Virus record (IMG/VR): IMGVR_UViG_3300032116_014939
Span: 62,001 to 126,000 of that record
DNA length: 64,000 bases
Strand: one strand, 5' to 3'
Below are positions 4,679-36,777 of the stretch, in pieces. The position numbers and the translations under genes are program-made. The notes under the pieces were generated by a model. That model had not been told where the DNA came from, did not search any database, and saw nothing but the letters and a program-made list of their open reading frames with translations. Numbering within the stretch: position 1 is the stretch's first letter; each line of letters starts with the position of its first letter.

Positions 4679-4900
4679 TTAACATGAAAGTATTTGAGTT
4701 GTTTCACAAGAATTACCATCAATAACTTTACAAAACACTGTTGTTGACCCTGTAAGAGATATAGGTAAATTAACAATAACAGGCCAATAAACAGGGTCAT
4801 ATTCCGTTTGAACCAAAGAACAATTATTACCCGCGAAATCACATAAATAAATTTGAAAGGGAGGTGTTCCATTAATATTGGATATTTCAACGTATGTCAT
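4679..4900 (-). CDS. Small Cys-containing structural protein, paralogous to the N-terminal domain of 35773..36777
   Basis: GTPPFQIYLCD...C...KVIDGNSC aligns by eye with [11 protein letters not shown]...C...KIVDSTGC. Confidence 0.65.
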   Translation of the reverse strand: MTYVEISNINGTPPFQIYLCDFAGNNCSLVQTEYDPVYWPVIVNLPISLTGSTTVFCKVIDGNSCETTQILSC

Positions 4901-4909
4901 ATTATATAA

Positions 4910-5788
4910 TTACCAACAAGTTACAATTACTAATCCATTTCCACCTCTCCCACCTGTTCCACCTGTGGTTCCAGCACCTCCACCACCTCCACCACTACCA
5001 GGTCCTCCATCACCACCATTACCACCAGCAACGTTTGCCGAACCTCCTCCTGTACCACCAAGAGATACAAAAGGTTTCCACATAAACATACCGTCAATAC
5101 CTCTACCACCATCTGCTGCACCACCTGCGACATTTTGAACAAACCCTGCACCTGTAATAGAACCTCCAGCTGAGGTCACGTTACCTGCGGTACGACCCGC
5201 ACCTCCACATCCCGAACCAAGTGGGACTACCCCTGTCCCGTATGTGTTTACAGTAGGAACACCAGTTGCACTACCCGCAATACCATTAATACCCGCCCTT
5301 GCAACAAATTCACCTAAGGATGTCATGGCAGCTATGTTAGCCGCTGTGCCAGTACCCCCATTACCTCCTGTACCACCCGCACCTACAGTTCCAGGGTTTC
5401 CACCTGAACCACCGTTAAGACTAATTAGTAGATACGTTTGTGCGTTTCCAACACCTCCAACATTTGTTGCAATTGAAGTTGAACCTCCGTTAGAACCAAC
5501 AGTATTTGCAGCACCTCCAGCCCCACCAGCGCCAACAGTAACTATTAAATTATCAGTTAAAAATATCCTTGGAATAATAATACGGTTAATCGCACCTGAA
5601 CCTCCACCTCCACCACCACCAGCAGCTCCAGTTGCATCTGTAAAACCTCCACCACCACCACCGCCTGGACTTATTAAAACAACATGTACCATAGAAACAC
5701 CGTTAGGTAATGCACAATTATGAACACCCGCACTACTGAAGATTTGTACTTTATGACCAATATTTGTTAAATTATATGCAAAATCCAT
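4910..5788 (-). CDS. Glycine-rich tail-fibre/adhesin-like protein, paralogue 3
   Basis: Poly-Gly GGxGG tracts, conserved GGGGGSGAI.R..IP..FLTD.L.V.VG.GG block, C-terminal GNGLVIVTCW. Confidence 0.65.
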   Translation of the reverse strand: MDFAYNLTNIGHKVQIFSSAGVHNCALPNGVSMVHVVLISPGGGGGGGFTDATGAAGGGGGGGSGAINRIIIPRIFLTDNLIVTVGAGGAGGAANTVGSNGGSTSIATNVGGVGNAQTYLLISLNGGSGGNPGTVGAGGTGGNGGTGTAANIAAMTSLGEFVARAGINGIAGSATGVPTVNTYGTGVVPLGSGCGGAGRTAGNVTSAGGSITGAGFVQNVAGGAADGGRGIDGMFMWKPFVSLGGTGGGSANVAGGNGGDGGPGSGGGGGGAGTTGGTGGRGGNGLVIVTCW

Positions 5789-5798
5789 AGTTATATTT

Positions 5799-6686
5799 TT
5801 ACCAACACTGTATTATTACCAAACCATCACCACCTCTTCCACCAACACCTCCAACACCTGTGGGTGAAGTACCTGCACCACCTCCTCCACCACCACATCC
5901 AATATTACCATTACCACCAGCACCACCTGAAACAGGAGTTGTTCCTCCACCACCACCTCCACTTCCTCCGACAGAATAAAATGGTGTTAATGAAAATACA
6001 CCAGGTGTCCCATCAGATGTTATAGTATTTCCAATACCGCCAGGATTTGTTGGTACAAAACCACCACCTGTCAAATTACCACCGTTTGTTGCCGTAGTCG
6101 CACCTGCTGCCATACCCCCTCCACCAGCACCTGATGTGAATGGTAACCCAATAGTCGCACCATAAGTAACTGAAGTGCCATTTGTAGTTGTTCCGTTACC
6201 ACCACCTTGACCTCCAAGAGCAAACCATTGTCCTAATGTTGAATATAAAGCTTGAGCAACGTTAGCCGCGGTCGCACCAACTCCCCCTGTCGCACCAACA
6301 CCACCTGTTCCCCCTGAAGCAACAACAACAAAAGTAGATACACCATTATTACGTGGAACTGGCATATCAACAGACGTGTTACCTCCCACACTACCTGAAC
6401 CTGCACCTGAGGCTCCACCTGCCCCTCCTAAACCAATATTTATTATAAGTGAATCTGTTACAAACATTTCAGGAATTATTACTCTTGTAATCGCACCTGA
6501 ACCTCCACCTCCACCACCTGACCTTGCGTTAGCGGATGTGTTTGTCGCACCACCAGCACCACCACCTCCAGCACCAATTGCCGTGATAGATAACATAGTT
6601 ATACCAGGTGGTTTTATCCAACTACCCGACTGATAAAACACACTCGTTTTATACGTTGTATCCGCTAAATTATATAAAAAACTCAT
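5799..6686 (-). CDS. Glycine-rich tail-fibre/adhesin-like protein, paralogue 2
   Basis: WIKPPGITMLSITAIGAGGGG...GSGAITRVIIP; C-terminal GDGLVIIQCW. Confidence 0.65.
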   Translation of the reverse strand: MSFLYNLADTTYKTSVFYQSGSWIKPPGITMLSITAIGAGGGGAGGATNTSANARSGGGGGGSGAITRVIIPEMFVTDSLIINIGLGGAGGASGAGSGSVGGNTSVDMPVPRNNGVSTFVVVASGGTGGVGATGGVGATAANVAQALYSTLGQWFALGGQGGGNGTTTNGTSVTYGATIGLPFTSGAGGGGMAAGATTATNGGNLTGGGFVPTNPGGIGNTITSDGTPGVFSLTPFYSVGGSGGGGGGTTPVSGGAGGNGNIGCGGGGGGAGTSPTGVGGVGGRGGDGLVIIQCW

Positions 6687-6698
6687 ATTATATACTTA

Positions 6699-7607
6699 TT
6701 ACCAACATGTAATTATTACCATACCAGGTCCACCATTTCCACCTGTTCCACCTGTGGTTCCAGCACCTCCACCTCCACCTCCACTTCCAATCTCACCCTT
6801 ACCACCAGAACCTCCAGTACCACCAGCAACAGAACCACCACCAGCTCCACCAACACTATAAAAACCTTTTAATCTAGAAGTTCCGCTACCACCATTTTGA
6901 GCACCTCCAGCACCTCCACCTGTACCACCCACAGATGAAGGCATAAATAAAACACCTGAAACATTACCACCATTAAAATTTCCGTTAGCTGCACTTTTTC
7001 CACCTCCAGCGGCTCCTCCTGATACAGTTGTACTATTACCGTTAATTGTCACACTACCACCTATTGCCGCGTTAGCACCTGCGGCACCCGCCTGACCTGC
7101 GATAGATAAAAAAGTCCCTAATGCTTGATAAACAGCGTTAGTCTGTGCACCAATAGCCCCTGCACCACCTCCAGCCGAAGCACCTCCCGCAACACCTACG
7201 TTACCACCTTGACCACCATTAGCCTGTATTACTCTTGTTGCCGCAACGTCACTACCTCTAGCACAATCAACAAAAGTATTACCCGCAGTTGCTCCTCCAC
7301 TACCTCCAGAGCCACCAATACCACCCGCAGCGACAGTTATTTCTAAACTGTCGGTTAAAAAAATCGCAGGAATAGTAAGTCTTGTTATAGCCCCCGAGCC
7401 ACCACCTGAACCACCAGACGCAGCGGTACTAACAGATGAGTTACCTGAACCACCTCCACCACCAGCACCAATTGCCGTGATGTGTATCATGGTAATACCT
7501 CTTGGTTTAATCCAATAAAAAACGCTTGAAGCGGTATTATTACCAATAGGTCCAATAAAGACTTGGTCTTTATATTGATTATCCGCTAAATGATAATAAT
7601 CTATCAT
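6699..7607 (-). CDS. Glycine-rich tail-fibre/adhesin-like protein, paralogue 1
   Basis: WIKPRGITMIHITAIGAGGGG...GSGAITRLTIP; C-terminal GPGMVIITCW. Confidence 0.65.
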   Translation of the reverse strand: MIDYYHLADNQYKDQVFIGPIGNNTASSVFYWIKPRGITMIHITAIGAGGGGGSGNSSVSTAASGGSGGGSGAITRLTIPAIFLTDSLEITVAAGGIGGSGGSGGATAGNTFVDCARGSDVAATRVIQANGGQGGNVGVAGGASAGGGAGAIGAQTNAVYQALGTFLSIAGQAGAAGANAAIGGSVTINGNSTTVSGGAAGGGKSAANGNFNGGNVSGVLFMPSSVGGTGGGAGGAQNGGSGTSRLKGFYSVGGAGGGSVAGGTGGSGGKGEIGSGGGGGGAGTTGGTGGNGGPGMVIITCW

Positions 7608-7613
7608 AATACA

Positions 7614-7802
7614 TTACGCCCATGATGGTGTTACTTTACGTGGTGGCGAATATTTAAATCTATATCCATACGGACCTTCTATAACTAAAGTGTTACCACT
7701 TAAATCAGTTAATCTAAGTAACTCGGTACCTTCATTATTTAACTCTTGGTATCCTTCACTTACAGGACTACCGTATTCAAAAACAATTTCATAGTATATC
7801 AT
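7614..7802 (-). CDS. Small hypothetical protein (62 aa, MIYYEIVFEY...), possible fibre accessory/chaperone
   Basis: Start moved to the ATG at 7802, which overlaps the upstream stop (TAATG coupling) and fills the gap exactly. Confidence 0.55.
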   Translation of the reverse strand: MIYYEIVFEYGSPVSEGYQELNNEGTELLRLTDLSGNTLVIEGPYGYRFKYSPPRKVTPSWA

Positions 7803-8221
7803 TAGTAATCTCCTCCTATAACTGTAGCTTGTATTCCCGCAACAACTGCTGTACCTATGGTACAATACATAATATATCCGGCAGGTAATGCAAAGTTTAA
7901 TGGTAATTCATAGTTTGTTGACGCACTAGTTTGAGACGCAGTATTTGCAGCAATTGTGATTTCATCCCAAATTGTGCTGTTATTGGGAGTTGCCAAAGCG
8001 CCTCCATTATTTATAAAAACCCTAGCCATTGTAGCGGCATTATTCGTGTTAGTGGACTGATGTCTAAATCTTATCTTTTGAACATAACTTCCGTTAGTAT
8101 TCGCACTAAAAACCATATATGAAGTTCCCGCAGACAAGTTACCTGTATTGGCAACCGTCATATTAGTCGTCCACATAATCTCAGGTGTTAGTGTAAAAAT
8201 TGGAGCTGTATTTGCTGGCAT
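7802..8221 (-). CDS. Hypothetical fibre-associated beta-rich protein (139 aa)
   Basis: Clean ORF directly downstream of the giant fibre gene; preceded by a TATTTAT motif. Confidence 0.6.
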   Translation of the reverse strand: MPANTAPIFTLTPEIMWTTNMTVANTGNLSAGTSYMVFSANTNGSYVQKIRFRHQSTNTNNAATMARVFINNGGALATPNNSTIWDEITIAANTASQTSASTNYELPLNFALPAGYIMYCTIGTAVVAGIQATVIGGDY

Positions 8222-8257
8222 ATTATTATATTAGTTTAATTTCTTTTATTATAAATA

Positions 8258-11200
8258 TTATATATAGTTAAAATTGTTTGCAGTTGTATAAACAAGTCCT
8301 AAAGTGAACGAACCACCCGCCGCTCCATCAACACCACTTGTTCCTGATGAACCTGAACCAGAACTTCCTGATGAACCACTTGAACCAGAACCTGATGTTC
8401 CTGATGAACCAGCAGTACCTGAAGAACCACTTGAACCAGAACCTGATGTCCCAGATGAACCCGCGGTACCTGAAGAACCACTTGAGCCAGAACCTGAAGT
8501 CCCCGATGAACCCGCAGTACCTGAAGAACCACTTGAACCAGAACCTGATGTTCCTGATGAACCAGCAGTACCTGAACTACCTGATGAACCCGAACTACCT
8601 GAAGTACCTGATGTTCCAGATGAACCGCTAGTACCACTACTTCCATTTGACCCTGAAGTTCCCGATGAACCTGAAGTACCTGATGACCCTGAAGTTCCCG
8701 ATGAACCACTAGTTCCTCTTGAACCCGTACTACCCGATGAACCAGAGCTTCCTGATGACCCACTTGAACCCGAACCAGATGTTCCTGAAGAACCTGAACC
8801 TGATGACCCACTTGAACCAGATGTTCCACTAATACCATCTAGACCACTTGTTCCTGAAGAACCTGAACCTGAACTTCCTGATGACCCAGCACTTCCTGAT
8901 GTTCCCGAAGAACCGCTAGTTCCTGATGAACCTGAACCAGAACTTCCCGATGACCCAGCGCTTCCTGATGTTCCTGAAGAACCACTTGTTCCACTACTTC
9001 CTGTGATACCCGACGAACCAGAACTACCTGATGAGCCAGCACTTCCTGATGTTCCTGAAGAACCACTTGTTCCACTTGAACCAGAACTACCCGATGACCC
9101 AGCGCTTCCTGAAGTTCCACTTGTACCGCTAGAACCTGAAGTTCCCGATGAACCACTGGTACCTCTTGACCCTGTACTTCCTGAAGAACCTGAACTTCCA
9201 CTTGAGCCTGATGAACCTGATGTTCCCGAAGAGCCGCTAGACCCACTTGAACCTGATGAACCTGACGAGCCACTCGAACCAGATGTTCCTGATGAACCGC
9301 TAGTCCCCGAAGAACCTGAACCTGAACTTCCTGATGACCCAGCACTTCCACTTGAGCCAGAGGTACCCGAAGAACCTGACGTTCCGCTACTACCTGTAAT
9401 ACCCGATGAACCAGAACTTCCTGATGAACCACTACTACCTGATGTTCCTGAACTACCACTAGTTCCACTACTTCCTGTAATACCTGAAGAACCTGAACTA
9501 CCACTACTTCCTGATGAACCACTAGTTCCACTACTTCCTGTAATACCTGAAGAACCACTACTTCCTGATGAACCACTAGTTCCTGATGAGCCAGACGTTC
9601 CCGAAGAACCAGTATTTCCACTAGAACCTGAAGAACCACTTGTACCCGATGAACCCGATGTTCCACTAGAACCCGATGAACCACTTGAACCAGTGCTACC
9701 TGAAGAACCGCTAGTTCCTGATGTACCTGATGAACCTGAAGTTCCTCTTGAACCTGTACTTCCTGAAGAACCAGAACTTCCGCTTGAACCTGATGACCCA
9801 CTTGAACCTGAAGTTCCTGATGAACCACTAGTTCCTGATGAGCCAGCACTTCCTGATGACCCTGAACTTCCTGAAGAACCTGAAGTCCCTGAACTACCAC
9901 TAGTTCCACTACTTCCTGTTAAGCCTGAAGACCCACTACTTCCTGAAGAACCACTTGTTCCTGATGAACCTGATGTACCAGAACTACCTGTATTACCTGA
10001 ACTCCCACTTGAACCTGAACTTCCTGAAGAGCCTGAAGTTCCAGAACTACCACTTGTACCCGAAGAACCTGTATTACCCGAACTTCCACTTGAACCAGCA
10101 CTACCTGATGAACCGCTAGTTCCAGAAGAACCTGATGTGCCAGAACTTCCAGTAATACCTGATGAACCTGAACTACCACTTGAACCTGAGCTCCCTGAAG
10201 TTCCAGAACTTCCACTAGTACCCGATGAACCTGTATTTCCACTTGAACCTGAACTACCCGCACTTCCACTTGAACCCGATGTTCCTGAACTTCCACTTGT
10301 TCCTGATGAACCTGTATTACCCGAACTTCCGCTACTTCCTGAAGAACCACTTGACCCTGAAGTACCCGAAGAACCAGATGTTCCTGAACTTCCACTTGAA
10401 CCAGAAGAACCGCTAGTCCCTGATGTACCTGAAGAACCACTTGTTCCTCTTGAGCCCGTACTACCTGATGACCCTGAGCTTCCACTTGAACCTGAGCTTC
10501 CTGAAGTTCCAGAAGAACCACTTGTTCCACTACTTCCAGTATTACCTGACGAACCTGACGACCCACTTGAGCCAGAAGAACCTGAAGTTCCAGAAGAACC
10601 ACTTGTTCCACTTGAGCCAGCACTTCCGCTAGACCCCGAACTACCTGAAGAGCCAGAAGAACCTGATGTTCCACTTGACCCAGAAGTTCCTGATGAACCA
10701 CTATTACCCGAAGAACCTGAGCTTCCACTTGAACCAGAAGAACCTGATGTTCCTGAAGAACCTCCAGTACCACTTGAGCCAGTACTTCCACTACTACCTG
10801 ATGAACCCGAACTTCCTGATGTACCTGAACTACCACTAGTCCCTGAAGAACCTGTATTTCCACTTGAACCCGAACTACCCGAAGAACCCGATGAACCTGT
10901 ACTACCTGAACTTCCACTTGAGCCTGAAGACCCTGATGTTCCACTACTACCCGATGTACCTGAGCTTCCACTAGACCCTGACGAACCACTTGAGCCAGAA
11001 GAACCTGATGTTCCAGAACTTCCACTAGTACCGGATGAGCCAGTGTTTCCGCTTGAACCTGAACTACCCGAGCTTCCTGAAGAACCACTTGTACCTACTG
11101 AACCTGAAGTACCAGCACTACCGCTAGAACCACTACTTCCACTTGAACCTGATGAACCTGAGCTTCCACTAGAACCAGAACTACCTGATGTACCAGAACT

Positions 11201-16168: not shown

Positions 16169-16223
16169 TTATTCTTTCCTTTTTTCCCTATCCAAAAGAA
16201 AATTCTTCTATGTTTATTTGTTA

Positions 16224-16252
16224 ATAAATATACTTGAAAAGTATTCTGTCAA
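16224..16252 (-). promoter_or_regulatory. Putative promoter of the 2636-aa fibre gene: TTGACA-N16-TATTTAT
   Basis: Minus strand reads TTGACA (16252-16247), 16 nt, then TATTTAT (16230-16224), just downstream of a terminator. Confidence 0.45.
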
Positions 16253-16262
16253 TCCTAAAATG

Positions 16263-23549: not shown

Positions 23550-23550
23550 A

Positions 23551-27035: not shown

Positions 27036-27720
27036 ATATTATATTTGATGCTTTATAAGCATTATTTTTTATTTCAATTCCATTCAATAATGCCGAGAAA
27101 CACATCTCATCTATGTTACCAGCGGGTATGTTTCTTAAACCTTTTTCTTTTTTATATTCAATACACTTGTCCCAAGTATCTAAAAAACTATTAAACTTAT
27201 CTTCATCAATACTCAAGTATTGAATACAATCTTCAGGCATAACCTCCAACTTATCTTTATCAACCTCATGATTGAAATACTTTTCATACTCAAGTAATCG
27301 TCTACCTAATTCACTATTGGTATGAACTTGTTCGTTAAAATTATATGTTACAGGCCCTGATAAACAATTTTCATCAAACGCCCCCAAAATCTTTTCTTGA
27401 TTAAAAAAAGATGGGTTAACTCTCATATCACAATCAACTAATATGATTTTAGTAAAACCAATACTTAAAGCAGCTCTTAACGAATATCTTTTAACTGAAA
27501 AATCAAAGTCATAGTAGTTTTTAGCATACTCCAAATAATTTGGATTAAAATCATTAATGTTAAAAGTGTGGACAAATTCTTGATTATTAATCTTACTTGG
27601 GTCATCAGTAATGACAACCAAATTTGTTTTATAATCTGATTCTATGATATCACCAATAAATCTATTAACTTGGTTATAATATCTTTCACCAAAACAAAAA
27701 GTAGCAAATGTAAATTTCAT
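27010..27720 (-). CDS. Putative GT-A fold nucleotide-sugar transferase
   Basis: FATFCFGERY, VVITDDP, FDFSVKR, ILVDCD (DxD) and a late DE motif; lies inside the GT operon. Confidence 0.6.
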   Translation of the reverse strand: MKFTFATFCFGERYYNQVNRFIGDIIESDYKTNLVVITDDPSKINNQEFVHTFNINDFNPNYLEYAKNYYDFDFSVKRYSLRAALSIGFTKIILVDCDMRVNPSFFNQEKILGAFDENCLSGPVTYNFNEQVHTNSELGRRLLEYEKYFNHEVDKDKLEVMPEDCIQYLSIDEDKFNSFLDTWDKCIEYKKEKGLRNIPAGNIDEMCFSALLNGIEIKNNAYKASNIIYAEHDKWY

Positions 27721-27723
27721 ATC

Positions 27724-28968: not shown

Positions 28969-29021
28969 GTAAACGTTTTACCCAAAATGTATTAATTTTA
29001 AATAAAAATTAAAGAAATAAA

Positions 29022-29828
29022 TTAATAAGTTTGAGCAGTTTGATATGTTTGTCTTGCAACAGTTGCAGTAAAGTTATTTACAGTATGTAGCGTAGTCCAT
29101 GTTGTTCCATTATTACTACCCGCAATAGTCCATGATTTAGGGTCTCTACTTTCAGCATCATTTGCGGTAGCCCATCTATATCCATTAAATGTTTTAGCAG
29201 TTGAGAACTGAAATATAAAATTAGTAACATTTCCGTTTGAGACAAAGTTTAAATCTAATCCTTTTGTTGCCAAATTACCATCAATTAATTTTGAGGGTTC
29301 TTCACCTACAGGATTACTACCACCAGGATTTGTAACGGTAACACCCGTCATACTTTGGTCAACACCATTTAACCTAAAAACAAATTCAGCAGCCTGTACA
29401 GCATTAGCATCAGGTGGCGATGTCTTTGTTTGAGTTATTTGCCATCTATAATAAGTAAATGAACTAACATAAGATGTCCAATATCCTGATGAGTTCAACC
29501 ATGTTTTAGCCGCGGATGCACTTGCAAATGTTTGTGGTGTTCCCGTAAAACTTGATACGTACTGAGACAAACTAATAAAGTTATTATCTGTCTTACCTGA
29601 TGTTCTCCAAAAACCAATATAAGCAGGAACTCCAACAGGATTTGGTTGTGTTCCTGATGGAACAGTATGAGCAATCACATAACCCAAATCTTCATCAGGC
29701 CCATTCCACCATCTTAAACCTGTGGATGTAAACCCACTTGTTGGTGTACCAATAGCAATACTTCCGACTTGTTCTGTCCCTGATATTGTTGAACCTGTGT
29801 TATATGCGAAGGGTCTTGATGTTGCCAT
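29022..29828 (-). CDS. Virion protein with C-terminal discoidin/F5-8 type C (CBM32-like) domain
   Basis: YYRWQIT...LIDGNLATK...GYRWATANDAESRDPKSWTIAGSNNGTTWTTL. Confidence 0.7.
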   Translation of the reverse strand: MATSRPFAYNTGSTISGTEQVGSIAIGTPTSGFTSTGLRWWNGPDEDLGYVIAHTVPSGTQPNPVGVPAYIGFWRTSGKTDNNFISLSQYVSSFTGTPQTFASASAAKTWLNSSGYWTSYVSSFTYYRWQITQTKTSPPDANAVQAAEFVFRLNGVDQSMTGVTVTNPGGSNPVGEEPSKLIDGNLATKGLDLNFVSNGNVTNFIFQFSTAKTFNGYRWATANDAESRDPKSWTIAGSNNGTTWTTLHTVNNFTATVARQTYQTAQTY

Positions 29829-29833
29829 TTTAT

Positions 29834-31651
29834 TTATAATCCATATTTTGATTTAGTATTATTATAGTTTGTTGTTACATCACTGGCGGTTAATCCTGTG
29901 GTATAAAAATAACAGGCACCTATTTTACCATTTAAATAAAGTGATGATATACCAGTACCAATGTAACCCAAATAAAGAGGGTTAGTTTCACTATATGTAT
30001 CAGTACCATGAGCGGTTGTTATATATTCGGTATTATTAATATACACTTTGGTGGTATTAGCAGTTGAGGTAATTCGTGAAACAAATGTAAATAAATACCA
30101 AGTATTAATTGAAACGGTTAACGTAGAGTCGGATATTTTTTGAACCCCCGTTCCATTTGTAACTACCCTCACAACGCCAGCATTCGAGAATAACCCACCC
30201 CAATACCCATCAAATCCAAATGAACTGGATAGTTTTCCAAAGACCGGAACTTGTTGACCTGAACTAGGTAAAACGTCAAATTTAACCCAAACTTGTATTG
30301 TTCTTTGGGTTGTAGTATTTAAACTAAGATTAGCAGTATGAGGTATACTTATTGTATTACTAGTCCCATTTAAATCAAAAATACCTCCGTCAGTAGACAA
30401 CCAAGTGGCACCATTTATAGTTGCGTTATTCCCATTCCCCGTTTCATCAGTCCAAGTACCACTAACATAATTAGTTGCATCTAACTTCATAAATAAATTA
30501 CTACTAATTACCCCACCCTCACTTGTTGATGACGGAGTAATTGTTGGTGTTGGTGTAATTGTATTTGTTGGGGTTTGTGTTGGTGTTGGAGTATTAGTTT
30601 GAGTGTTAGTAGGTGTAATTGTTGGTGTTATTGAAGGTGTTGGAGTTTGAGTATTAGTTGGAGTTGGAGTAGGTGATGGTGAAATAAATCTTGATGAAAA
30701 TGAATTAAAGTTTGTTAACACTTCTGTTGAACTTAAAACTCTATTGTAAGTCATTGCAATTGAAACTCTACCATTTAATAAATTACCTCCTGCGCCATAA
30801 GAACCAATCCTTGTAGAACCATTACCACTTACAGGTGTTTTTTGAGCAGTATATGTACTATCCTGAACACCATTAACATATAGAATGAAACCATTTGTTG
30901 TGTCAAAAGTAAGACATGCATTATACCAAACACCATTACTAAAACTTGTTGTTGAGGGATAAACACCATAATTACCCCAATTTGAGTGTCCACAGTATAA
31001 TTTATTTGAACCTGCAAAATACATAAAGTGTCCACCCGTATCGCTACTTAATAAGTTGTTATCAGCAGTTGAGTTTAGGTAAAACCAAACGTTTTTAGTA
31101 TATGCTGTTATTCCAACAGGAGTACCTGCAACGTTAACATATTGATTACTTCCGTTAAATGTAAGGTATCCATTATTACTTGAACTGAATGTCGGAGTAT
31201 TAATTAATGTTCCGTTGTTACCACTAAAACTTAAATCATCCCATCGTGAACCACTTCTTGGATATGATGAAACATAACCAGCATCAAGTAATAATGTTAA
31301 TCCATTAGTTACAATATCAGGATAATCAAGGTTAACACAAATAAGTCCTGTTTGACCTGTATACCATCCTAACGCTTCGTTAGCGGTACTAAATGTTTGA
31401 CCTGCAAATCCTTGAGTAAACCCAATAAGTTCTGAGTCGTTTTGAGCAACCACTATGGATGGTCCGGCAACAGCCTTGTTTCCATACATGGTATAACCAC
31501 CTGATGGTGGTATAATAGAATTCCAAAATCCTGTAACACTTGTTGGCCCGTATTCCGCACCTTCATTAATACCTAAAACCCAATCCTTAACTTTAATCGT
31601 ATTAGGATGAAAGGACGTTGAGTATTTTATTTTATTTGGTGGTATTGGCAT
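29834..31651 (-). CDS. Virion lectin-like protein with two LamG/ConA-like domains joined by a Pro/Thr linker
   Basis: Start moved to MPIPPNK (31651, TAATG overlap). LLLDAG..SSYP.SG..W.DLS..GNNGTL.N.PT...YNRVLS..EV..N occurs twice in variant form; TPTPTNTQTPTP linker. Confidence 0.75.
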   Translation of the reverse strand: MPIPPNKIKYSTSFHPNTIKVKDWVLGINEGAEYGPTSVTGFWNSIIPPSGGYTMYGNKAVAGPSIVVAQNDSELIGFTQGFAGQTFSTANEALGWYTGQTGLICVNLDYPDIVTNGLTLLLDAGYVSSYPRSGSRWDDLSFSGNNGTLINTPTFSSSNNGYLTFNGSNQYVNVAGTPVGITAYTKNVWFYLNSTADNNLLSSDTGGHFMYFAGSNKLYCGHSNWGNYGVYPSTTSFSNGVWYNACLTFDTTNGFILYVNGVQDSTYTAQKTPVSGNGSTRIGSYGAGGNLLNGRVSIAMTYNRVLSSTEVLTNFNSFSSRFISPSPTPTPTNTQTPTPSITPTITPTNTQTNTPTPTQTPTNTITPTPTITPSSTSEGGVISSNLFMKLDATNYVSGTWTDETGNGNNATINGATWLSTDGGIFDLNGTSNTISIPHTANLSLNTTTQRTIQVWVKFDVLPSSGQQVPVFGKLSSSFGFDGYWGGLFSNAGVVRVVTNGTGVQKISDSTLTVSINTWYLFTFVSRITSTANTTKVYINNTEYITTAHGTDTYSETNPLYLGYIGTGISSLYLNGKIGACYFYTTGLTASDVTTNYNNTKSKYGL

Positions 31652-34600
31652 TATCTTGCAACTTCTGTTATTCTTAACCACATTGATGTAGCCCCATTTA
31701 CTATTGTAATACTATCATCCGCAGAATCTCTACGACACGCAACAACTACTGATTTTGCAGTAGTGTTAGAGTTAGTATATCTTCCCGTTAATGGAAACAA
31801 TACACCACTACGATTACCATTTACAGTACTTTGTTTTGAATATGTTATTTCACTACCATCAATTTTTATTCTAGAAAAATATGAGTCATTACCTGTACCA
31901 CTAGCAAAACTATAATCCGCTAAATGATAATGTATCACTAAATAACTTGTAGAACTTAATGGTGTATAACTATAAGTAACAAAATCAGTATCCGAAGTAC
32001 TGGTAGCAATAGTTGTAGTACTAACAGTTACCTCAGTATTACTCAAAATAATATCGTTAATTACCTGACCGGCTCTCCATGCATTAGCCTTTATAAATCC
32101 TGTAAATACCACATTACCTGAAGTGTCTACGGCCATCTTTACAGCCCCACCAGTTTCATTTAATTTATTTGTGATACGAACTAACTGTCCACTTAAAACA
32201 TCAAATGAACCGTTCCAACTATCAATACCATAGTTTGAATTATTAGCATAATAAAACAAAACACCCGGAGTATCTGTACTATTATTATCAAGAATAACAT
32301 CACCAGTAGCTGACCCCGCCCTTGTAAATGTTCCGTTACCAAGAGAGGTTACACCTGTAGTACTTATATTACCAGTAATAGTCGTGGAACCAATAATTGT
32401 TGTATCACCTGTTACCGCCAGTTTAATTCCATCAAAAGTCATTTTAGCTTGAGCAACCGCAGCGTTAGCTGTTCCATCAGATGTTAATATTCTATTACTA
32501 CCCGGACTTGTAATTGTAGTAAATCCAGTACCTGATGTTCCAGCAGAACCTGAACTACCCGATGAACCTGATGTACCAGAACTACCTGACGTACCAGAGC
32601 TACCACTCGTTCCTGATGTACCCGAAGAACCTCTTGAACCTGATGTACCACTACTTCCACTTGACCCTGAAGAACCTGATGTTCCACTTATCCCATCTAA
32701 ACCACTTGTTCCCGATGAACCACCATTACCTGAGGTACCACTACTTCCTGACGTTCCTGAAGAACCCGATGAACCACTACTACCACTAGTACCTGAACTA
32801 CCCGAAGACCCTGATGTCCCACTACTTCCACTTGAGCCCGAACTTCCCGAAGAACCACTAGTTCCAGATGTACCTGAAGTTCCGTTAACACCACCTGTCT
32901 GATAATATGTATTACCACTAGTATCAACAACAACATAACGAGTATTTCCTGTTGAACTTGTAATTCCTGTAACAGTTAAACTACTTGTTGTTGTTCTACC
33001 TGAACCATTAAAATGAATTCTATCAATACCTGAACCATCTTGAATAACTAACACATTGTCGGCATCCGACGCACTACCTCTTCTAAAAGTAATTCCATCA
33101 AGAGTTGAGTTAGTTGTTATTTCTGGTTCAGATGAGTTGTTATATGCTTGTTGTAATGTAGTTGTCGCAACACCTCCCGCAGAACCTACAGTTTCACCAA
33201 ATTTTGATGCAAAAAAGAATTGAGCTTTAGATGAATCACTTAAATCAGTTGCAGTACTTACAACTGATAAAACACCAATTAAAATACCATTACTTGTAAA
33301 ATTACTAAACGTATTAAATTGTTCAGTTGCAAGACCAGCGATTGCTGCAGATAACTGATTATATTCTGTTTGACCATATTGAACTCTAAATTGACCATTT
33401 TGAACCAAATAAATTCTTTGGTTGGTTGCCTTTGTTCCTGTAAGAGGAGTAACAACTCCACCAACATCATAATTTAACGGGTCAATAAATGTTGTATTTG
33501 ATGCGGTACCACCTGTTTGTGTTCGATATTGAAAAGTACAAGGACTTGTACCTGTAACATATAACGCGTTTGGAGTTAGTGTACTTGACGCAAAATTAAT
33601 ACCTAAACCATAAAGATATCCTGCACTTGTATTAAAACTTAAATTAACACCATTAGCTGACGGATATATTCCACCATTTATAAGATTAATAGGAACAAAC
33701 ATGTCCCTGAGTTGAGCTAATGGAGATAGTACAAAATCAGGTTGACTGAACGCGTTAATAATATTTGTTTTGTTTGCATGACCTAATTTACCTAAAAATA
33801 TATTTTGTCTTCTTTGTTGTTCCGTTAGTTCAATATTTGATTGAGCAATAGTCGACCCACTTGTAAGATATACCCAAGTCTCAGTATCAGTATTAACATA
33901 TATTGCAGTATGAGTACCACCACTATAATCAACATAATAGATTTGAGGACTTAATGGATTTGTTGTATCATCAACTATCCACCCTTTAACAGGTGCAACT
34001 CTAAACGTTGTTGTGGATACAATTGATAATCCTGTAAATACAAATACACCTGTTGAGTTATTAACAGTACTTCTATCTTGTCCTAAAATTACCCATTGAG
34101 AACCATTACTCACAAGTTGTGCGGCGTTTGTTTCACTTAGAATTAATAAAGTTTTATCGTCAATCTTTTCACTCCCATAGGGTAGAATAGTTACCGCACC
34201 TCCACCATTATTTTTGATAGCTAATAGTCGACCTTGAATACCAACTGCGGTTGGTAATTGTACATTAAAGGTACCACCAGTAATGTCCACCATATAATCT
34301 GAAGGTGTAATATTATATGTACTAGTAACGGTTTTTTGAGGAAATGTGATACCACCTGTAGATGTTATCCCACTAGTCTGAGTTAAACCTGTAACAGTTA
34401 AAGTACTAGCGGTTAATCCGCTTGTAAAATAAGTATTACCATAAACAGTTCCACCAGTTAATGGTAAGTAATCACCACTAACACCTCCACCACCTGGTAT
34501 GGTAACTGTAACCGCAGGACCTCCTGTTGCATTAACACCTGAGCCAACAAAATCAATAGATGTTACCCCTGATGTTAATAAACTACCTTCGTTATAAATC

Positions 34601-35763
34601 GATATAGCGTTTCCTGATATACCACTACTTCCTGAACTACCAGAAGAACCCGGAGAACCTGTTGGACCTGAAGTACCCGATGTACCAGAACTTCCTGATG
34701 ACCCACTACTACCTGATGAACCTGAACTACCATTTGTACCAGTACCTCCACCTCCACCATTAACAGGAATAACTGTAACAATCAAAGAAGGGATTGCCGG
34801 ATGTAACGCAGTTGCCGCCTGAGCATATAAAGATATATTAGTATTATCTGTCGCCCACATTAATTCAACATATGTTCCAGCGGTAACTGTAACCAAGAAG
34901 TCCCAAGCCGCAACAACATATCTATTATTAGTTTGAACTGTAACTTGAGTATCAGTATAAGGAACGTCAACACCATTTTGCCTTAACCATATATCAACAT
35001 CTTCACCCGAACCACCACCTCCATTATTACTTAATTGAACTGAAAATTGGATGTCATATGTTCCCGCACTTGCGAAAGTAATCTGACTACCCGAAACAAT
35101 TGTGATACCACTAGCCTCAGCGACACTATTTAACCTCATTGGATAAGCGGTATTAATCAAAGAAGCGGTTTGTCCTGAAGTATCATAGAATGAACCATAA
35201 GCATTCGCTCCCGTAACACCACCTGACGAACCCGTTACAAACTTTCTCCATACCGCAGTAGTATATGTTGCCCCACTAACATCTTCAATAGTGTTAGCCG
35301 TCCAAGAATTAATAAACGACTGACCCGCAGCCGTTTTATTATTTATTGTTGTTCCAAAATTAGAAACCTGAGCACATCCCGTACTAGCAGTCGCAGCATT
35401 AAATAACGTCTCGTAATCATTAATATGGTATTGATAAACTTGGTCAACCTCATAAACATAAGCCAACATACCAAGTCGTCTTCTACCTGATGAGATGTTA
35501 TCTGAAGCCAAAGTAATTACATCAGGTGACCAAGCATCTCCCGTTCCTTTTGTAAACTCAATAGGAATAGTATTACCCGAATATTCAATACTTCCCGTGG
35601 TACCTGATGGTATTGTATAATAGAGGTCAGATAAACTGAACACCTCCATGTAACCACCCGTATTATTAACACTGAAAGTAGTACCATACGTATTGTTTCT
35701 TGGTACAGTTTGTGTTCCATTTGCTTGGATAGATGATATTGGGTTTTTATATGGGAAACTCAT
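31651..35763 (-). CDS. Fibre protein (1370 aa) with short Gly-X-Ser repeats; mosaic of the modules in both giant fibres
   Basis: SSGRRRLGM N-domain, LPTAVG..G....IKNNG module, GSS/GTS tracts at about 32530-32885 and 34620-34740, RILTSDG..AQAKMTFDG. Confidence 0.7.
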   Translation of the reverse strand: MSFPYKNPISSIQANGTQTVPRNNTYGTTFSVNNTGGYMEVFSLSDLYYTIPSGTTGSIEYSGNTIPIEFTKGTGDAWSPDVITLASDNISSGRRRLGMLAYVYEVDQVYQYHINDYETLFNAATASTGCAQVSNFGTTINNKTAAGQSFINSWTANTIEDVSGATYTTAVWRKFVTGSSGGVTGANAYGSFYDTSGQTASLINTAYPMRLNSVAEASGITIVSGSQITFASAGTYDIQFSVQLSNNGGGGSGEDVDIWLRQNGVDVPYTDTQVTVQTNNRYVVAAWDFLVTVTAGTYVELMWATDNTNISLYAQAATALHPAIPSLIVTVIPVNGGGGGTGTNGSSGSSGSSGSSGSSGTSGTSGPTGSPGSSGSSGSSGISGNAISIYNEGSLLTSGVTSIDFVGSGVNATGGPAVTVTIPGGGGVSGDYLPLTGGTVYGNTYFTSGLTASTLTVTGLTQTSGITSTGGITFPQKTVTSTYNITPSDYMVDITGGTFNVQLPTAVGIQGRLLAIKNNGGGAVTILPYGSEKIDDKTLLILSETNAAQLVSNGSQWVILGQDRSTVNNSTGVFVFTGLSIVSTTTFRVAPVKGWIVDDTTNPLSPQIYYVDYSGGTHTAIYVNTDTETWVYLTSGSTIAQSNIELTEQQRRQNIFLGKLGHANKTNIINAFSQPDFVLSPLAQLRDMFVPINLINGGIYPSANGVNLSFNTSAGYLYGLGINFASSTLTPNALYVTGTSPCTFQYRTQTGGTASNTTFIDPLNYDVGGVVTPLTGTKATNQRIYLVQNGQFRVQYGQTEYNQLSAAIAGLATEQFNTFSNFTSNGILIGVLSVVSTATDLSDSSKAQFFFASKFGETVGSAGGVATTTLQQAYNNSSEPEITTNSTLDGITFRRGSASDADNVLVIQDGSGIDRIHFNGSGRTTTSSLTVTGITSSTGNTRYVVVDTSGNTYYQTGGVNGTSGTSGTSGSSGSSGSSGSSGTSGSSGSSGTSGSSGSSGSSGTSGSSGTSGNGGSSGTSGLDGISGTSGSSGSSGSSGTSGSRGSSGTSGTSGSSGTSGSSGTSGSSGSSGSAGTSGTGFTTITSPGSNRILTSDGTANAAVAQAKMTFDGIKLAVTGDTTIIGSTTITGNISTTGVTSLGNGTFTRAGSATGDVILDNNSTDTPGVLFYYANNSNYGIDSWNGSFDVLSGQLVRITNKLNETGGAVKMAVDTSGNVVFTGFIKANAWRAGQVINDIILSNTEVTVSTTTIATSTSDTDFVTYSYTPLSSTSYLVIHYHLADYSFASGTGNDSYFSRIKIDGSEITYSKQSTVNGNRSGVLFPLTGRYTNSNTTAKSVVVACRRDSADDSITIVNGATSMWLRITEVAR

Positions 35764-35772
35764 TTACTATAA

Positions 35773-36777
35773 TTATATATCAACCTTACTTCCTCTAAAA
35801 TAAAGGTCGTAAGTATTATCCAATTCAAATGTATTTGATGGGTATGTAGTATAAACTCTATAAGTTGTTTTTGCAATAGTATTACCCGTATAAGTAAATG
35901 TATTAGTATAAATTGTCGGTTCCATCTTTACACTTGTAAAGACATTTGGATTTACAATTCCTAAATCAATCTCAATCTGATATTGGTTATTTGTTAAATT
36001 AGTCGGTATTATCCAAGTGTACCATGCTTTACATCCAATAGTATTTTCAGGTACTTTAACTGTTGGGAAATTATATCGAATATACGGATTACCATATGTA
36101 TCAAATCCCCCACTTGTTCCTGGCACAATTTGTTTTATAATACTTGGAAACAATCCTGTTGTCCATCCCGAAAAATTAACATATTTATTCATGTCCAAAT
36201 CAAATGTACTCGCTGAACTACTCGGTTGTGTAGTATTTGTAAACCCATAAAAACTTGAGCCAAGTGAGTTCATGTATGAACCAATACTTGATGAACCTGA
36301 ATACGGTTCAATGAATAAATAAGCGTAAATAGGAGTTTCAGGTGTCACAGTTGGAGTAGGGGTTCTTGTAACAGTTGGAGTAATTGTCTGAGTTGGGGTA
36401 TGAGATGGTGTAACTGTTTGTGTAGGTGTAATACTTGGTGTTATACTCGGTGTCGGTGTAAATGATGGAGTGATACTTGGTGTTGGAGTATTTGACGGAG
36501 TTAAAGAAATTGTTGGAGTAACACTTGGAGTAATACTTGGTGTTGGTGTTGGTGTTACACATATATATTCTTGTGTAAAAACACATCCTGTTGAATCAAC
36601 TATTTTAATTAAAACTTTTGGTGCCGATGAATATGGACTCGGAATATTAAAACTAACAGATGGTGGAATATAATCATATATAGTTGTCACAGTTTGACAA
36701 GAATATTGAAATATATCACAAACTGAAATAACATAAGGAGGTGTTCCTCCCAAACTATCTATTGTTACTAAACTCAT
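35773..36777 (-). CDS. Fibre adaptor protein with Cys N-domain and Pro/Thr linker
   Basis: [21 protein letters not shown] linker near-identical to the one in 22344..23549; paralogous C-domain. Confidence 0.6.

What the first reader, a model, noticed from the sequence alone, without database searches (positions are those of the whole stretch)
4679..36777. Duplicated, domain-shuffled fibre modules flanking the GT operon
Module A (36777 to 29022): Pro/Thr adaptor, SSGRRRLGM fibre, 2xLamG protein, discoidin protein. Module B (23919 to 4679): BppU-like gene, Pro/Thr adaptor, SSGRRRLGM giant fibre, second giant fibre, Gly-rich proteins. The adaptors share their linker and C-domain. The 1370-aa fibre combines parts of both giant fibres: its N-domain and post-repeat GTGF.TI..P...RILT..G...AQ.K.TFDG match 16319..22315, while its GGIT.PQ.T....DYMV...GGTF...LPTAVG module and pre-repeat VVVD..G.TYY.TGG match 8258..16168. 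This suggests two appendage types (short and very long) built from a common docking code but with different anchors and tips.
Basis: seen in the sequence. Interest (0 to 1): 0.6.

Follow-up and report, generated by a model that had tools for sequence, protein, structure and literature searches.

The report
Modular collagen-like phage fibres with adaptors
An uncultured 242-kb freshwater jumbo phage builds a short and a very long tail appendage from swappable protein modules joined by two conserved docking junctions, with a sugar-adding enzyme operon between the two gene sets.

Summary
All the claimed paralogies are significant outside the low-complexity parts. The two fibre N-domains are 43% identical (E 3e-30). 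The GGIT module is about 50% identical (E 1e-22 to 8e-26). The post-repeat motif scores E 8e-8, and the adaptor C-domains alone score E 6e-6.

The window lies in a 242-kb IMG/VR phage record, downstream of gp25-like and gp6-like baseplate genes.

- **Joint 1.** In 80 of 80 related loci, the fibre gene that starts with the SSGRRRLGM N-domain directly follows a gene ending in the adaptor C-domain. The reverse holds in 73 of 78 testable loci.
- **Joint 2.** In every context found, a fibre ending in the 1998-aa protein's C-terminal domain is followed by a fibre gene beginning MANEF...GGIT. This suggests the two giant fibres join in series.
- **Shuffling.** Breakpoints lie at residue ~175 and inside the collagen arrays.
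- **Collagen arrays.** They are proline-free (G-S/T-S)n. One has 486 uninterrupted triplets and the other about 500, roughly 0.42 and 0.44 µm if they form triple helices.
- **GT operon.** It includes a PF11397 (GT60-type) polypeptide GlcNAc-transferase. Mucin-like Pro/Thr linkers are plausible substrates.

Physical binding is not shown: the complex prediction gave no verdict. Neither joint domain matched a known fold. The "BppU-like" label has only weak support. I rate this a new variant of a known kind.

The parts
35773..36777 (-). Adaptor A (334 aa). It has a 74-aa Cys-containing anchor domain (36556-36777), a Pro/Thr linker (about 36334-36555) and a C-domain (35776-36333).
   Evidence: Sequence. 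C-domain profile match E 4e-71. AF2 model of the C-domain: pLDDT 90.7. Anchor HMM E 6e-34.
31651..35763 (-). Fibre A (1370 aa). In order: N-domain with SSGRRRLGM (aa 1-175, nt 35239-35763); domain 176-335; 17 GXY triplets; GGIT module (aa 465-585, nt 34009-34371); middle part 586-957; 41 GXY triplets (nt 32524-32892); post-repeat neck and C-terminal domain (nt 31654-32523).
   Evidence: PHROG tail-fibre hits E 1e-18 to 1e-19. Pfam Collagen.
29834..31681 (-). Protein with two Laminin_G_3 domains separated by a Pro/Thr linker. The true start is probably the ATG at about 31651.
   Evidence: Pfam PF13385, E 5e-26, two stretches. Sequence.
29022..29828 (-). Protein with a conserved 125-aa N-part and a discoidin-like (F5/8 type C) C-domain.
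   Evidence: PF00754, 26.9 bits, just under the 28.2 cut-off. In relatives the N-part is joined to other lectin domains.
23949..28968 (-). Operon of five genes for glycosyltransferases or probable glycosyltransferases. 27724-28968 is PF11397 (GlcNAc polypeptide transferase type). 25616-26179 is a GT2 hit just under the cut-off. 23949-25619 is HtrL_YibB plus a weak TAGT hit. 26172-27035 is a paralogue of the HtrL-like part.
   Evidence: PF11397 E 3e-68, 231 bits; GT2 22.9 bits vs 23.3 cut-off. (23949 vs 26172, E 6e-6).
23551..23919 (-). Stand-alone 122-aa copy of adaptor B's anchor domain.
   Evidence: 34% identity to adaptor B aa 10-121, E 1.6e-12. 481 homologues in uncultured phages. BppU_N suggested only by atlas features.
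22344..23576 (-). Adaptor B (410 aa from the TTG; the likely ATG start is at 23549). It has a B-type anchor, a Pro/Thr linker and a C-domain (22347-22985).
   Evidence: C-domain profile match E 1e-62.
16319..22315 (-). Fibre B1 (1998 aa). In order: N-domain with SSGRRRLGM; 21 GXY triplets; domain 271-388; 486 uninterrupted G-S/T-S triplets (nt 16778-21151); post-repeat neck plus a small C-terminal domain, here called Cterm_B (nt 16322-16777).
   Evidence: Pfam Collagen E 1e-205. The same gene length is found in other records.
8258..16168 (-). Fibre B2 (2636 aa). In order: MANEF leader plus GGIT module (aa 1-130); a 950-aa non-collagen part; about 500 G-S/T-S triplets with a few two-residue breaks (nt 8309-12910); a 16-aa end.
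   Evidence: The same gene length is found in four other records.
7802..8221 (-). 139-aa protein of unknown family. It travels with the Gly-rich genes in relatives.
   Evidence: Homologues at 58-59% in L038-L044 and L092. No family hit.
4910..7607 (-). Three paralogous Gly-rich proteins of 292, 295 and 302 aa. Each ends in ..G.V(I)I..CW.
   Evidence: Pfam PF21722 Gly_rich_2: 40.3 and 34.4 bits (cut-off 24.3), with the third at 19.6 bits. Paralogy.
4679..4900 (-). Stand-alone 73-aa copy of adaptor A's anchor domain.
   Evidence: HMM built from 43 anchor sequences: E 4e-29. 34% identity to adaptor A aa 1-73, E 4e-13.

Best explanation
This is the fibre region of an uncultured freshwater jumbo myovirus. 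It encodes two baseplate or tail appendages assembled from exchangeable parts through two conserved non-covalent junctions.

Junction 1 (inferred). An adaptor protein consists of a small anchor domain, a mucin-like Pro/Thr tether and a ~185-205-aa C-domain. The C-domain is proposed to hold the ~175-aa N-domain (SSGRRRLGM) of the fibre encoded directly downstream. Adaptor A and adaptor B carry unrelated anchors, so the two appendages probably sit at different sites. Their docking pairs have diverged (C-domains 25-28% identical, N-domains 44-46%), which could keep them from cross-assembling.

Junction 2 (inferred). The small C-terminal domain of the 1998-aa fibre is proposed to bind the MANEF/GGIT start of the 2636-aa fibre. 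This would make one serial fibre, comparable to the proximal and distal halves of the T4 long tail fibre.

Appendage A is short: a 1370-aa fibre with 58 collagen triplets in all, plus LamG and discoidin-like lectin proteins. Appendage B is very long, with two proline-free (G-S/T-S)n arrays of about 0.42 and 0.44 µm if they are triple-helical.

Shown: new fibres arise by recombination just after the N-domain and inside the collagen-coding repeats. This explains why the 1370-aa fibre is a chimera.

Inferred: the GT operon between the modules, which includes a GT60-type polypeptide GlcNAc-transferase, O-glycosylates the Thr/Ser-rich linkers and possibly the Ser/Thr collagen arrays.
For: Context: the window is in a 242-kb virus record. 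Baseplate gp6-like and gp25-like genes lie upstream on the same strand. PHROG tail-fibre hits cover the 1370-aa protein.

Junction 1:
- Only two N-domains and two adaptor C-domains occur in the genome, each pair adjacent.
- In 80 of 80 IMG/VR loci found with the N-domain, the upstream gene ends in the C-domain: 74 by masked BLASTP, and the other 6 (three representatives tested) by unmasked BLASTP.
- In 73 of 78 testable loci found with the C-domain, an N-domain starts within about 50 nt.
- Adaptor length (325-856 aa), linker length and the rest of the fibre (330-2797 aa) all vary freely around the pair.
- Many fibres share only residues 1-175.
- 220 database proteins carry the N-domain with very diverse C-terminal Pfam domains.
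- C-domain and N-domain distances correlate at r 0.85, with a partial r of 0.61-0.65 after controlling for neighbouring structural genes.

Junction 2: in the window, L107, L108, L109, L110, L111, L113, L114, L115 and L090, a fibre ending in Cterm_B is followed by a fibre gene starting MANEF.. The gap is 120-140 nt, or one or two other genes (lectin-like in L110 and L111) lie between. In other fibres the GGIT module is fused internally.

Collagen arrays:
- 486 of 486 Gly are in register, although the DNA repeats are only 70-93% alike.
- X and Y positions differ in composition (chi-square 94, p 1e-18).
- The array spacing is identical in four other records.

Shuffling: L003, L012 and L013 match the window fibre at 1-174 or 1-334 and at 1090-1370, and differ only between or inside the collagen arrays.

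GT operon:
- PF11397 at 231 bits.
- GT60 enzymes make GlcNAc-alpha-O-Thr on mucin-like proteins (PMC9472816).
- No ThyA-family or Tet/JBP gene was found in the record.
- In L174 and L176 a protein ending in the adaptor C-domain is followed directly by this GT.
Against: - No physical evidence of binding. The complex prediction of C-domain with N-domain scored 0.01, 0.43 and 0.02, which is no verdict.
- The C-domain is much less conserved than the N-domain (42% vs 71% mean column identity). This would also fit an N-domain that binds a more conserved baseplate site.
- Neither domain matches a known fold, so no structural precedent supports the joint.
- Conserved gene order and correlated distances can arise from linkage alone.
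- The G-S/T-S arrays have no proline and almost no charged residues, so stable triple-helix formation is uncertain.
- The GT target is not known. A weak TAGT hit and GT homologues near replication genes in phage XacN1 leave DNA or other targets open.
- The record is only 82% complete.
Confidence: 0.58

Rival explanations
1. The adaptors are not docking partners of the fibres. The fibre N-domain binds a conserved baseplate protein directly. The 'adaptors' are independent Pro/Thr-tethered decoration or glycan-binding proteins, and they stay next to the fibre gene only because of operon linkage.
For: The N-domain is far more conserved than the adaptor C-domain. The best, though weak, structural neighbours of the C-domain are CBM-like and Ig-like beta-sandwiches (Z no higher than 4.4). 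The complex prediction gave no support. In L189, L192 and L193 a C-domain-like module sits inside other architectures without an N-domain fibre downstream.
Against: Adjacency is 80 of 80 and 73 of 78, with only a few bases between the genes, while everything around the pair recombines. Both pairs in this genome keep the arrangement. The partial correlation of the two domains' distances is 0.61-0.65 beyond the neighbouring genes.
Confidence: 0.22
2. The giant G-S/T-S arrays are not rigid collagen triple helices. They are flexible, probably glycosylated, Ser/Thr-rich polymers forming a mucin-like brush or 'hair'. Such a brush would aid loose adhesion to host slime or shield the particle, rather than act as a long receptor-reaching fibre.
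For: There is no proline and almost no charged residue in 486 triplets. A polypeptide-type GT operon is embedded in the fibre genes. The 2636-aa protein ends 16 residues after the array, with no head domain.
Against: Gly is kept at every third residue through 1458 residues despite diverged DNA repeats. X and Y positions have different residue preferences (p 1e-18). The arrays are flanked by conserved pre- and post-repeat motifs and by globular domains that could nucleate trimers.
Confidence: 0.2
3. The GT operon has nothing to do with the fibres. It modifies phage DNA or host surface glycans.
For: There is a weak TET-associated glycosyltransferase hit in 23949-25619 (E 0.003, below the cut-off). 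Homologues of the PF11397 enzyme (44-47% identity) in Xanthomonas and Stenotrophomonas jumbo phages; in XacN1, the one examined, it lies near DNA polymerase and RNase H.
Against: No thymidylate-synthase-family hydroxymethylase or Tet/JBP gene was found in the 242-kb record, though the record is 82% complete. The operon sits between the two fibre modules here, and its position seems kept in relatives: in L019-L021 a 5-kb stretch of unexamined content lies there, and in L174/L176 the GT follows an adaptor-type protein directly. PF11397/GT60 enzymes act on Thr or Hyp of proteins (own knowledge). Three proteins here carry mucin-like linkers.
Confidence: 0.3
4. The extreme lengths of the two giant genes are artefacts of metagenome assembly through repeats.
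For: Short-read contigs of public runs are broken into pieces of 200-600 bases across the array, and none spans it.
Against: Four other IMG/VR records from different metagenomes have exactly the same distances between flanking unique sequences (8000 and 6100 nt), though at 100% identity they may not be fully independent. Internal pieces of the array match contigs from independent lake studies without a mismatch. The repeats are degenerate at 70-93%. Relatives carry fibres of 2031, 2042 and 2797 aa.
Confidence: 0.05

Closest known systems
T4-type long tail fibre (gp34-gp35-gp36-gp37), joined end to end
   Same: Consecutive genes encode trimeric fibre segments, and the C-terminal end of one is thought to meet the N-terminal start of the next. 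Here the Cterm_B domain is always followed by a gene that starts with MANEF/GGIT. The region lies after the baseplate wedge genes.
   Different: PHROGs and Pfam returned no T4 long-tail-fibre family for the proteins scanned; B1 and B2 were scanned against Pfam only. The shafts are collagen-like arrays rather than beta-structured rods. A tethered adaptor with a Pro/Thr linker has no T4 counterpart.
BppU/BppL baseplate of Lactococcus phage TP901-1, and anchor-branch receptor-binding-protein systems such as those of G7C, CBA120 and K1-5 type phages (own knowledge)
   Same: The logic is the same. An adaptor has an N-terminal domain fixed to the baseplate and a C-terminal part that holds an exchangeable receptor-binding protein through the latter's conserved N-terminus. 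The atlas feature search places the 122-aa anchor near clusters where a tenth of members carry BppU_N.
   Different: There is no HMM or profile match to BppU. The adaptor C-domain has no known fold. The long mucin-like linker of 75 to about 300 residues is not a feature of BppU.
Bacterial and prophage collagen-like proteins such as BclA of Bacillus anthracis and collagen-like tail fibres of prophages, and collagen-like fibrils of Mimivirus (own knowledge; reviewed in PMC4691112)
   Same: All have Gly-X-Y arrays flanked by globular domains. BclA and the Mimivirus fibrils are glycosylated on the collagen-like or Thr-rich parts by dedicated enzymes.
   Different: Here the arrays are G-S-S / G-T-S without proline. 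At 486 and about 500 triplets they are much longer than in any of those proteins I know of (own knowledge, not checked against a database). They also sit in a tailed phage.
Virion glycosylation in mycobacteriophages (Freeman et al. 2023, PMC10527164, cited in PMC12619734)
   Same: Phage-encoded glycosyltransferases modify structural proteins of the virion.
   Different: That work concerns the capsid and tail-tube C-termini of siphoviruses of Actinobacteria. Here the proposed substrates are fibre adaptors and collagen arrays, and the enzyme is of the PF11397/GT60 type. No glycosylation has been shown here.
'Moraphages', freshwater jumbo phages of 200-307 kb predicted to infect Bacteroidota (PMC12619734)
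   Same: The N-domain family occurs on freshwater contigs of up to 326 kb, including one of 307 kb.
   Different: Membership was not tested, because no sequence of those genomes was compared. The paper does not mention collagen and mentions tail fibres only once.

Membership tests
Collagen triple-helix repeat (PF01391) | Uninterrupted Gly-X-Y periodicity | tested here: met
   Pfam E 1e-205, 2e-186 and 1e-19. 486 of 486 triplets are in register in the 1998-aa protein.
Collagen triple-helix repeat (PF01391) | Stabilising residues (Pro/Hyp or charged pairs) in the X and Y positions | tested here: not met
   X is S or T in 96% of triplets and Y in 90%. There is no Pro and almost no charged residue.
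Collagen triple-helix repeat (PF01391) | Trimeric triple helix | not testable with these tools
   Needs CD, mass measurement or imaging.
BppU (PF10651 BppU_N) baseplate upper protein | Match to the BppU_N model or to TP901-1 BppU | tested here: not met
   No Pfam hit for the 122-aa protein, for adaptor B's N-part or for 14 homologues. hhalign against TP901-1 ORF48 gave probability 0.25%.
BppU (PF10651 BppU_N) baseplate upper protein | Fold or feature resemblance | tested here: inconclusive
   In the atlas feature search, 13 of 30 nearest clusters belong to a set where 10% of members carry BppU_N (score 0.96).
Phage tail fibre proteins (PHROGs 16641, 1806, 5073 and others) | Profile match | tested here: met
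   The 1370-aa protein matches at E 1.8e-18 (aa 589-867) and 1.5e-19 (aa 929-1101).
T4-type serial fibre joints | Consecutive genes whose C-terminal and N-terminal modules co-occur | tested here: met
   All 10 contexts, counted after removing obvious duplicates by eye, show Cterm_B followed by a MANEF/GGIT start.
T4-type serial fibre joints | Physical end-to-end binding | not tested
PF11397 GlcNAc transferase (CAZy GT60 type) | Profile match above the curated cut-off | tested here: met
   231.4 bits against a cut-off of 21, E 2.7e-68. An IDSH motif (D-x-H) is visible in the sequence. The link between this Pfam family and GT60 is from my own knowledge.
PF11397 GlcNAc transferase (CAZy GT60 type) | Transfers GlcNAc to Thr/Ser/Hyp of a protein substrate | not testable with these tools
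   Needs an enzyme assay or glycoproteomics.
Laminin_G_3 (PF13385) | Profile match above the cut-off | tested here: met
   92.2 bits, two stretches, in 29834-31681.
F5/8 type C (discoidin, PF00754) | Profile match above the cut-off | tested here: inconclusive
   26.9 bits against a cut-off of 28.2.
Gly_rich_2 (PF21722) | Profile match above the cut-off | tested here: met
   40.3 and 34.4 bits (cut-off 24.3) for two of the three proteins. The third scores 19.6 bits.

The most novel reading that the evidence does not exclude
The phage makes a thread approaching a micrometre in length. Two giant, proline-free collagen-like fibres would be docked in series and hung from the particle by a mucin-like tether. 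The Ser/Thr-rich parts would be O-GlcNAc-glycosylated by a phage-encoded GT60-type polypeptide transferase. This would be a mucin-type protein glycosylation system in a bacteriophage that stabilises an otherwise unstable triple helix. Stand-alone copies of the anchor domains would set how many fibres each particle carries.
Probability: 0.2. Interest if true: 0.85.

Novelty: new variant of a known kind. Interest (0 to 1): 0.6.

Why it matters
Modular tail fibres with conserved attachment ends are a known principle. Here the two junction domains, the tethered adaptor and the anchor domains belong to no described family. They are widespread in uncultured freshwater jumbo phages: hundreds of proteins, in metagenomes of 14 studies.

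The locus offers a defined and testable docking code for host-range modules in phages that cannot yet be grown. It gives a natural example of collagen-coding repeats acting as in-frame recombination linkers. It includes some of the longest uninterrupted Gly-X-Y arrays I know of (own knowledge, not checked against a database), and they lack proline.

If the embedded GT60-type enzyme glycosylates the linkers or arrays, that would extend mucin-type O-glycosylation to phage virions. It would also bear on how proline-free triple helices are stabilised.

Tried and rejected
- **Complex prediction** of adaptor C-domain with fibre N-domain, using 33-row alignments: scores 0.01, 0.43 and 0.02. This is no verdict and counts as evidence neither way.
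- **Fold searches, adaptor C-domain model** (pLDDT 90.7): Foldseek PDB found nothing at E ≤ 0.001. VIA wide gave a best Z of 4.4, only generic beta-sandwiches. The atlas gave TM 0.47 to a viral hypothetical protein only.
- **Fold searches, N-domain model** (pLDDT 65; residues 1-37 poor): Foldseek PDB found nothing. VIA wide gave a best Z of 3.7. Atlas features returned only viral hypotheticals, with a sub-threshold lead to Mtd_N.
- **PDB sequence searches** of the 2636-aa N-part, the 1370-aa middle part and a Gly-rich protein found nothing. The 1370-aa C-part gave only E 0.1-0.6 hints to lactococcal receptor-binding proteins.
- **NCBIfam** gave nothing for the adaptors, Gly-rich proteins or lectin proteins.
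- **tblastn** of the N-domain and of the 987-aa upstream protein against 50,697 GenBank phages: no match.
- **BppU tests**: Pfam on 16 family members and hhalign against TP901-1 ORF48 were negative.
- **Adaptor A's anchor as an SprB repeat**: rejected. There is no Pfam hit, and its HMM hits only adaptor A and the ORF at 4679-4900.
- **A recent DNA duplication of the modules**: rejected. DNA identity between paralogous parts is only 69-79%.
- **Laying public contigs on the 1998-aa gene** could not confirm its length, because the contigs break in the repeats.
- **Not used**: the large representative protein search and the third word search.

Full report
**What the window is.** All genes in the region lie on the minus strand. 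The window is bases 62001-126000 of a 242,064-base IMG/VR virus record estimated to be 82% complete. Upstream on the same strand are a gp25-like and a gp6-like baseplate wedge gene (54022-54474 and 52146-54017) and ribonucleotide reductase genes. The nearest isolates by the gp6-like protein are only about 27% identical: Flavobacterium phage immuto, Microcystis phage Mel-JY01 and a 484-kb uncultured phage. Near-identical DNA occurs in freshwater and lake metagenomes of 14 studies. G+C is about 30% and rises to 43-49% in the collagen-coding parts. A recently described lineage of freshwater jumbo phages ('moraphages', 200-307 kb, Bacteroidota hosts, four core glycosyltransferase families; PMC12619734) may be the same group, but I did not test this.

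**Check of the observation.** BLASTP of all proteins against each other, with low-complexity masking, confirms every claimed similarity:
- Fibre A (1370 aa) residues 1-175 against fibre B1 (1998 aa) residues 1-171: 43%, E 3e-30.
- Fibre A 1081-1120 against B1 1847-1887: 56%, E 8e-8.
- Fibre A 474-584 against fibre B2 (2636 aa) 19-126: 47%, E 1e-22.

A weaker match of fibre A 579-969 to B2 738-1098 (25%, E 3e-4) contains the VVVD..G.TYY.TGG motif, which directly precedes the collagen array in both proteins. The adaptor C-domains, cut free of the linker, still align at E 6e-6. Both match a family profile at E 4e-71 and 1e-62. So the refutation criterion ("alignments not significant outside the low-complexity parts") is not met.

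DNA identity between the paralogous parts is only 69-79%. These are old paralogues, not a fresh duplication.

**Anatomy of the fibres.**
- Fibre A: N-domain; a 160-aa domain; 17 Gly-X-Y triplets; the GGIT module; a 370-aa middle part with tail-fibre PHROG hits; 41 triplets; a neck shared with B1; a 250-aa C-terminal domain.
- Fibre B1: N-domain; 21 triplets; a 118-aa domain; 486 uninterrupted triplets; the shared neck; a ~110-aa end domain. The neck and end domain together are called Cterm_B here.
- Fibre B2: starts MANEFVARRGIISLGGIT.. (the GGIT module); continues with about 950 non-collagen residues; then carries about 500 triplets with a few two-residue breaks; ends 16 residues later.

The arrays are G-S-S and G-T-S, with no proline. 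At 0.286 nm per residue (own knowledge) they would span about 417 and 439 nm.

Three results argue that the arrays are structured rather than merely low-complexity. Glycine is kept in register through 1458 residues. The underlying DNA repeats are only 70-93% alike. The X and Y positions prefer different residues (Leu/Ile only in X, Val/Ala almost only in Y; chi-square 94, p 1e-18).

The lengths do not appear to be an assembly accident. Four other records have identical spacing between the unique flanks, though at 100% identity they may not be fully independent. Internal pieces match contigs of independent lake runs exactly, though no short-read contig spans the array.

**Junction 1: adaptor C-domain and fibre N-domain.** The genome has exactly two copies of each, and each pair is adjacent.
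- A scan of IMG/VR with the N-domain found 127 stretches, of which 80 loci were kept. In all 80 the gene immediately upstream has the form [small N-terminal domain]-[Pro/Thr linker]-[C-domain]. Masked BLASTP showed this for 74 loci. For the other six, unmasked BLASTP on three representatives gave E 3e-8 to 1e-3.
- The reverse scan with the C-domain gave an N-domain starting within about 50 nt in 73 of 78 testable loci.
- The exceptions are two loci where the adaptor-type protein is followed by the PF11397 glycosyltransferase, and three where a C-domain-like module lies inside a different protein.

Around this constant pair everything else varies. Adaptors range from 325 to 856 aa, with linkers from about 75 to 300 residues. 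Fibres range from 330 to 2797 aa. Many fibres resemble fibre A only in residues 1-175. The word search found 220 proteins with this N-domain and very diverse C-terminal Pfam domains, including Peptidase_S74, PTR and DUF285.

Pairwise distances of the two domains correlate at r 0.85. This is higher than either domain's correlation with the neighbouring structural genes (0.74-0.80), and it gives a partial r of 0.61-0.65.

All of this fits a docking pair, but none of it is physical evidence. The one complex prediction allowed gave no verdict. The C-domain folds confidently (pLDDT 90.7; a beta-sandwich with two helices) but matches nothing known. The N-domain model is mediocre (pLDDT 65) and also unmatched. 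Neither domain occurs in 50,697 GenBank phage records by tblastn or in Pfam, PHROGs or NCBIfam.

**Anchors.** Adaptor A begins with a 74-aa Cys-containing domain. Adaptor B begins with an unrelated ~120-aa domain. Each anchor also exists as a stand-alone gene in the window. The 122-aa ORF at 23551-23919 is 34% identical to adaptor B's anchor (E 1.6e-12). Relatives show the same habit, with a small A-type anchor gene just upstream of the adaptor or fibre.

The 'BppU-like' label gets only soft support. Atlas features place the 122-aa protein near clusters where 10% of members carry BppU_N. Pfam on 16 family members and hhalign against TP901-1 BppU were negative.

**Junction 2: Cterm_B and the MANEF/GGIT start.** In the window, B1 ends in Cterm_B, and B2 starts 150 nt later with MANEF..GGIT. 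The same order holds in every other context found (L107, L108, L109, L110, L111, L113, L114, L115 and L090; redundancy among the loci was removed by eye). The gap is 120-140 nt, or one or two other genes (lectin-like in L110 and L111) lie between. Even where the GGIT module is reduced, the MANEF leader remains (L113, L115). In fibre A, L091 and L092 the GGIT module is fused inside a single protein. This fused-versus-split pattern usually marks interacting parts. I therefore read B1 and B2 as the proximal and distal halves of one appendage, not as two separate fibres.

B2 lacks a head domain. The conserved cassette that follows it may supply the tip or assist assembly, but this is speculation. 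The cassette consists of the 139-aa protein and three Gly_rich_2 proteins, and it is also linked to fibres in L092 and L038-L044.

**How the shuffling happens.** Close relatives of fibre A (N-domain ≥ 96% identical) are 665, 744 and 916 aa long. They match the window protein at 1-174 or 1-334 and at 1090-1370. The differences lie between or inside the collagen arrays. In fibre A, the second array is preceded by a B2-type motif and followed by a B1-type neck. The repeats therefore act as in-frame recombination linkers, and residue ~175 is a second fixed breakpoint.

**The glycosyltransferase operon.** Gene 27724-28968 is a strong PF11397 match (231 bits). By my own knowledge this family corresponds to CAZy GT60, whose members add GlcNAc to Thr of mucin-like proteins (PMC9472816). 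The others are an HtrL/YibB-like protein with a weak TAGT hit, a paralogue of it, a GT2 hit just under the cut-off (22.9 vs 23.3 bits) and an unassigned gene.

Three proteins in the region carry mucin-like Pro/Thr linkers: both adaptors and the LamG protein. The first 21 linker residues of the two adaptors are identical, although 9 of 21 codons differ synonymously. This points to selection on that peptide.

The record has no ThyA-family or Tet/JBP gene that would supply hydroxymethylated bases for DNA glycosylation. It is incomplete, however, and homologues of the enzyme in XacN1-type jumbo phages lie near replication genes. Protein O-glycosylation of the linkers, and perhaps of the arrays, is therefore my preferred reading, at roughly even odds. 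Phage-encoded virion glycosylation has a precedent in mycobacteriophages (PMC10527164, as cited in PMC12619734).

**Comparison and verdict.** The system works like known modular receptor-binding assemblies: T4 long tail fibres for the serial joint, and BppU/BppL or anchor-branch systems for the adaptor. It is a member of none of them by sequence or fold. Four things are distinctive:
- the two undescribed junction domains;
- the mucin-like tether;
- the stand-alone anchor copies;
- the very long proline-free Gly-X-Y arrays with an embedded GT60-type operon.

I rate it a new variant of a known kind, with interest 0.6.

Noticed in passing
window 4679-4900 (-) and 23551-23919 (-): Each adaptor's anchor domain also exists as a stand-alone small gene (73 aa and 122 aa). 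Relatives likewise carry a small A-type anchor gene just upstream of the adaptor or fibre. These may fill or cap attachment sites, or set the number of fibres per particle. Their role is unexplained.
   Followed up: partly
window 36493-36555 and 23052-23114 (-): The first 21 linker residues ([21 protein letters not shown]) are identical in both adaptors, although 9 of 21 codons differ synonymously, including AGT/TCA serine switches. The motif is kept in 15 related loci. It may be a recognition site, for example for the glycosyltransferase.
   Followed up: partly
L174 and L176, 239-4422: A 942-aa protein ending in the adaptor C-domain is followed directly by the PF11397 glycosyltransferase and further GT-like genes, not by an N-domain fibre.
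   Followed up: no
L102 (Xanthomonas phage XacN1, AP018399.1 213153-232496): The PF11397 enzyme has 44-47% identical homologues in Xanthomonas and Stenotrophomonas jumbo phages of 309-385 kb. In XacN1 it sits beside a carbamoyl transferase, a GT9 gene and a 3313-aa ORF.
   Followed up: partly
window 4910-8221 (-); L092 11337-14309; L038-L044 3404-6748: A cassette made of a 139-aa protein plus three Gly_rich_2 paralogues (each ending ..V(I)I..CW) travels with fibre genes in relatives. Its function is unknown. It may be a tip or an assembly factor.
   Followed up: partly
window 29022-29828 (-); L019 9011-10057; L110 4488-5600; L111 4422-6263: The first ~125 residues of the discoidin-like protein are conserved, while the C-terminal lectin domain is swapped (discoidin-like, LamG or other). 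This looks like a third exchangeable-tip arrangement.
   Followed up: no
window 8304-12923 (+) and 16773-21158 (+): Very long open frames (1539 and 1461 aa) lie on the opposite strand of the collagen arrays. They are a by-product of the repeat composition, since antisense Gly/Ser/Thr codons lack stops. They are not genes.
   Followed up: partly
window 36805-38985 (-) and 2602-4632 (-): Two proteins carry SprB-type repeats (PF13573, a family typical of Bacteroidota gliding adhesins) and bracket the fibre region. This fits a Bacteroidota host.
   Followed up: no
window 34759-35238 (-), fibre A aa 176-335: This domain is present in some close relatives (L012, L013) and absent in others (L003). 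It is also found in a separate 696-aa protein in L066. By eye it resembles a jelly-roll head domain, but this was not tested.
   Followed up: no
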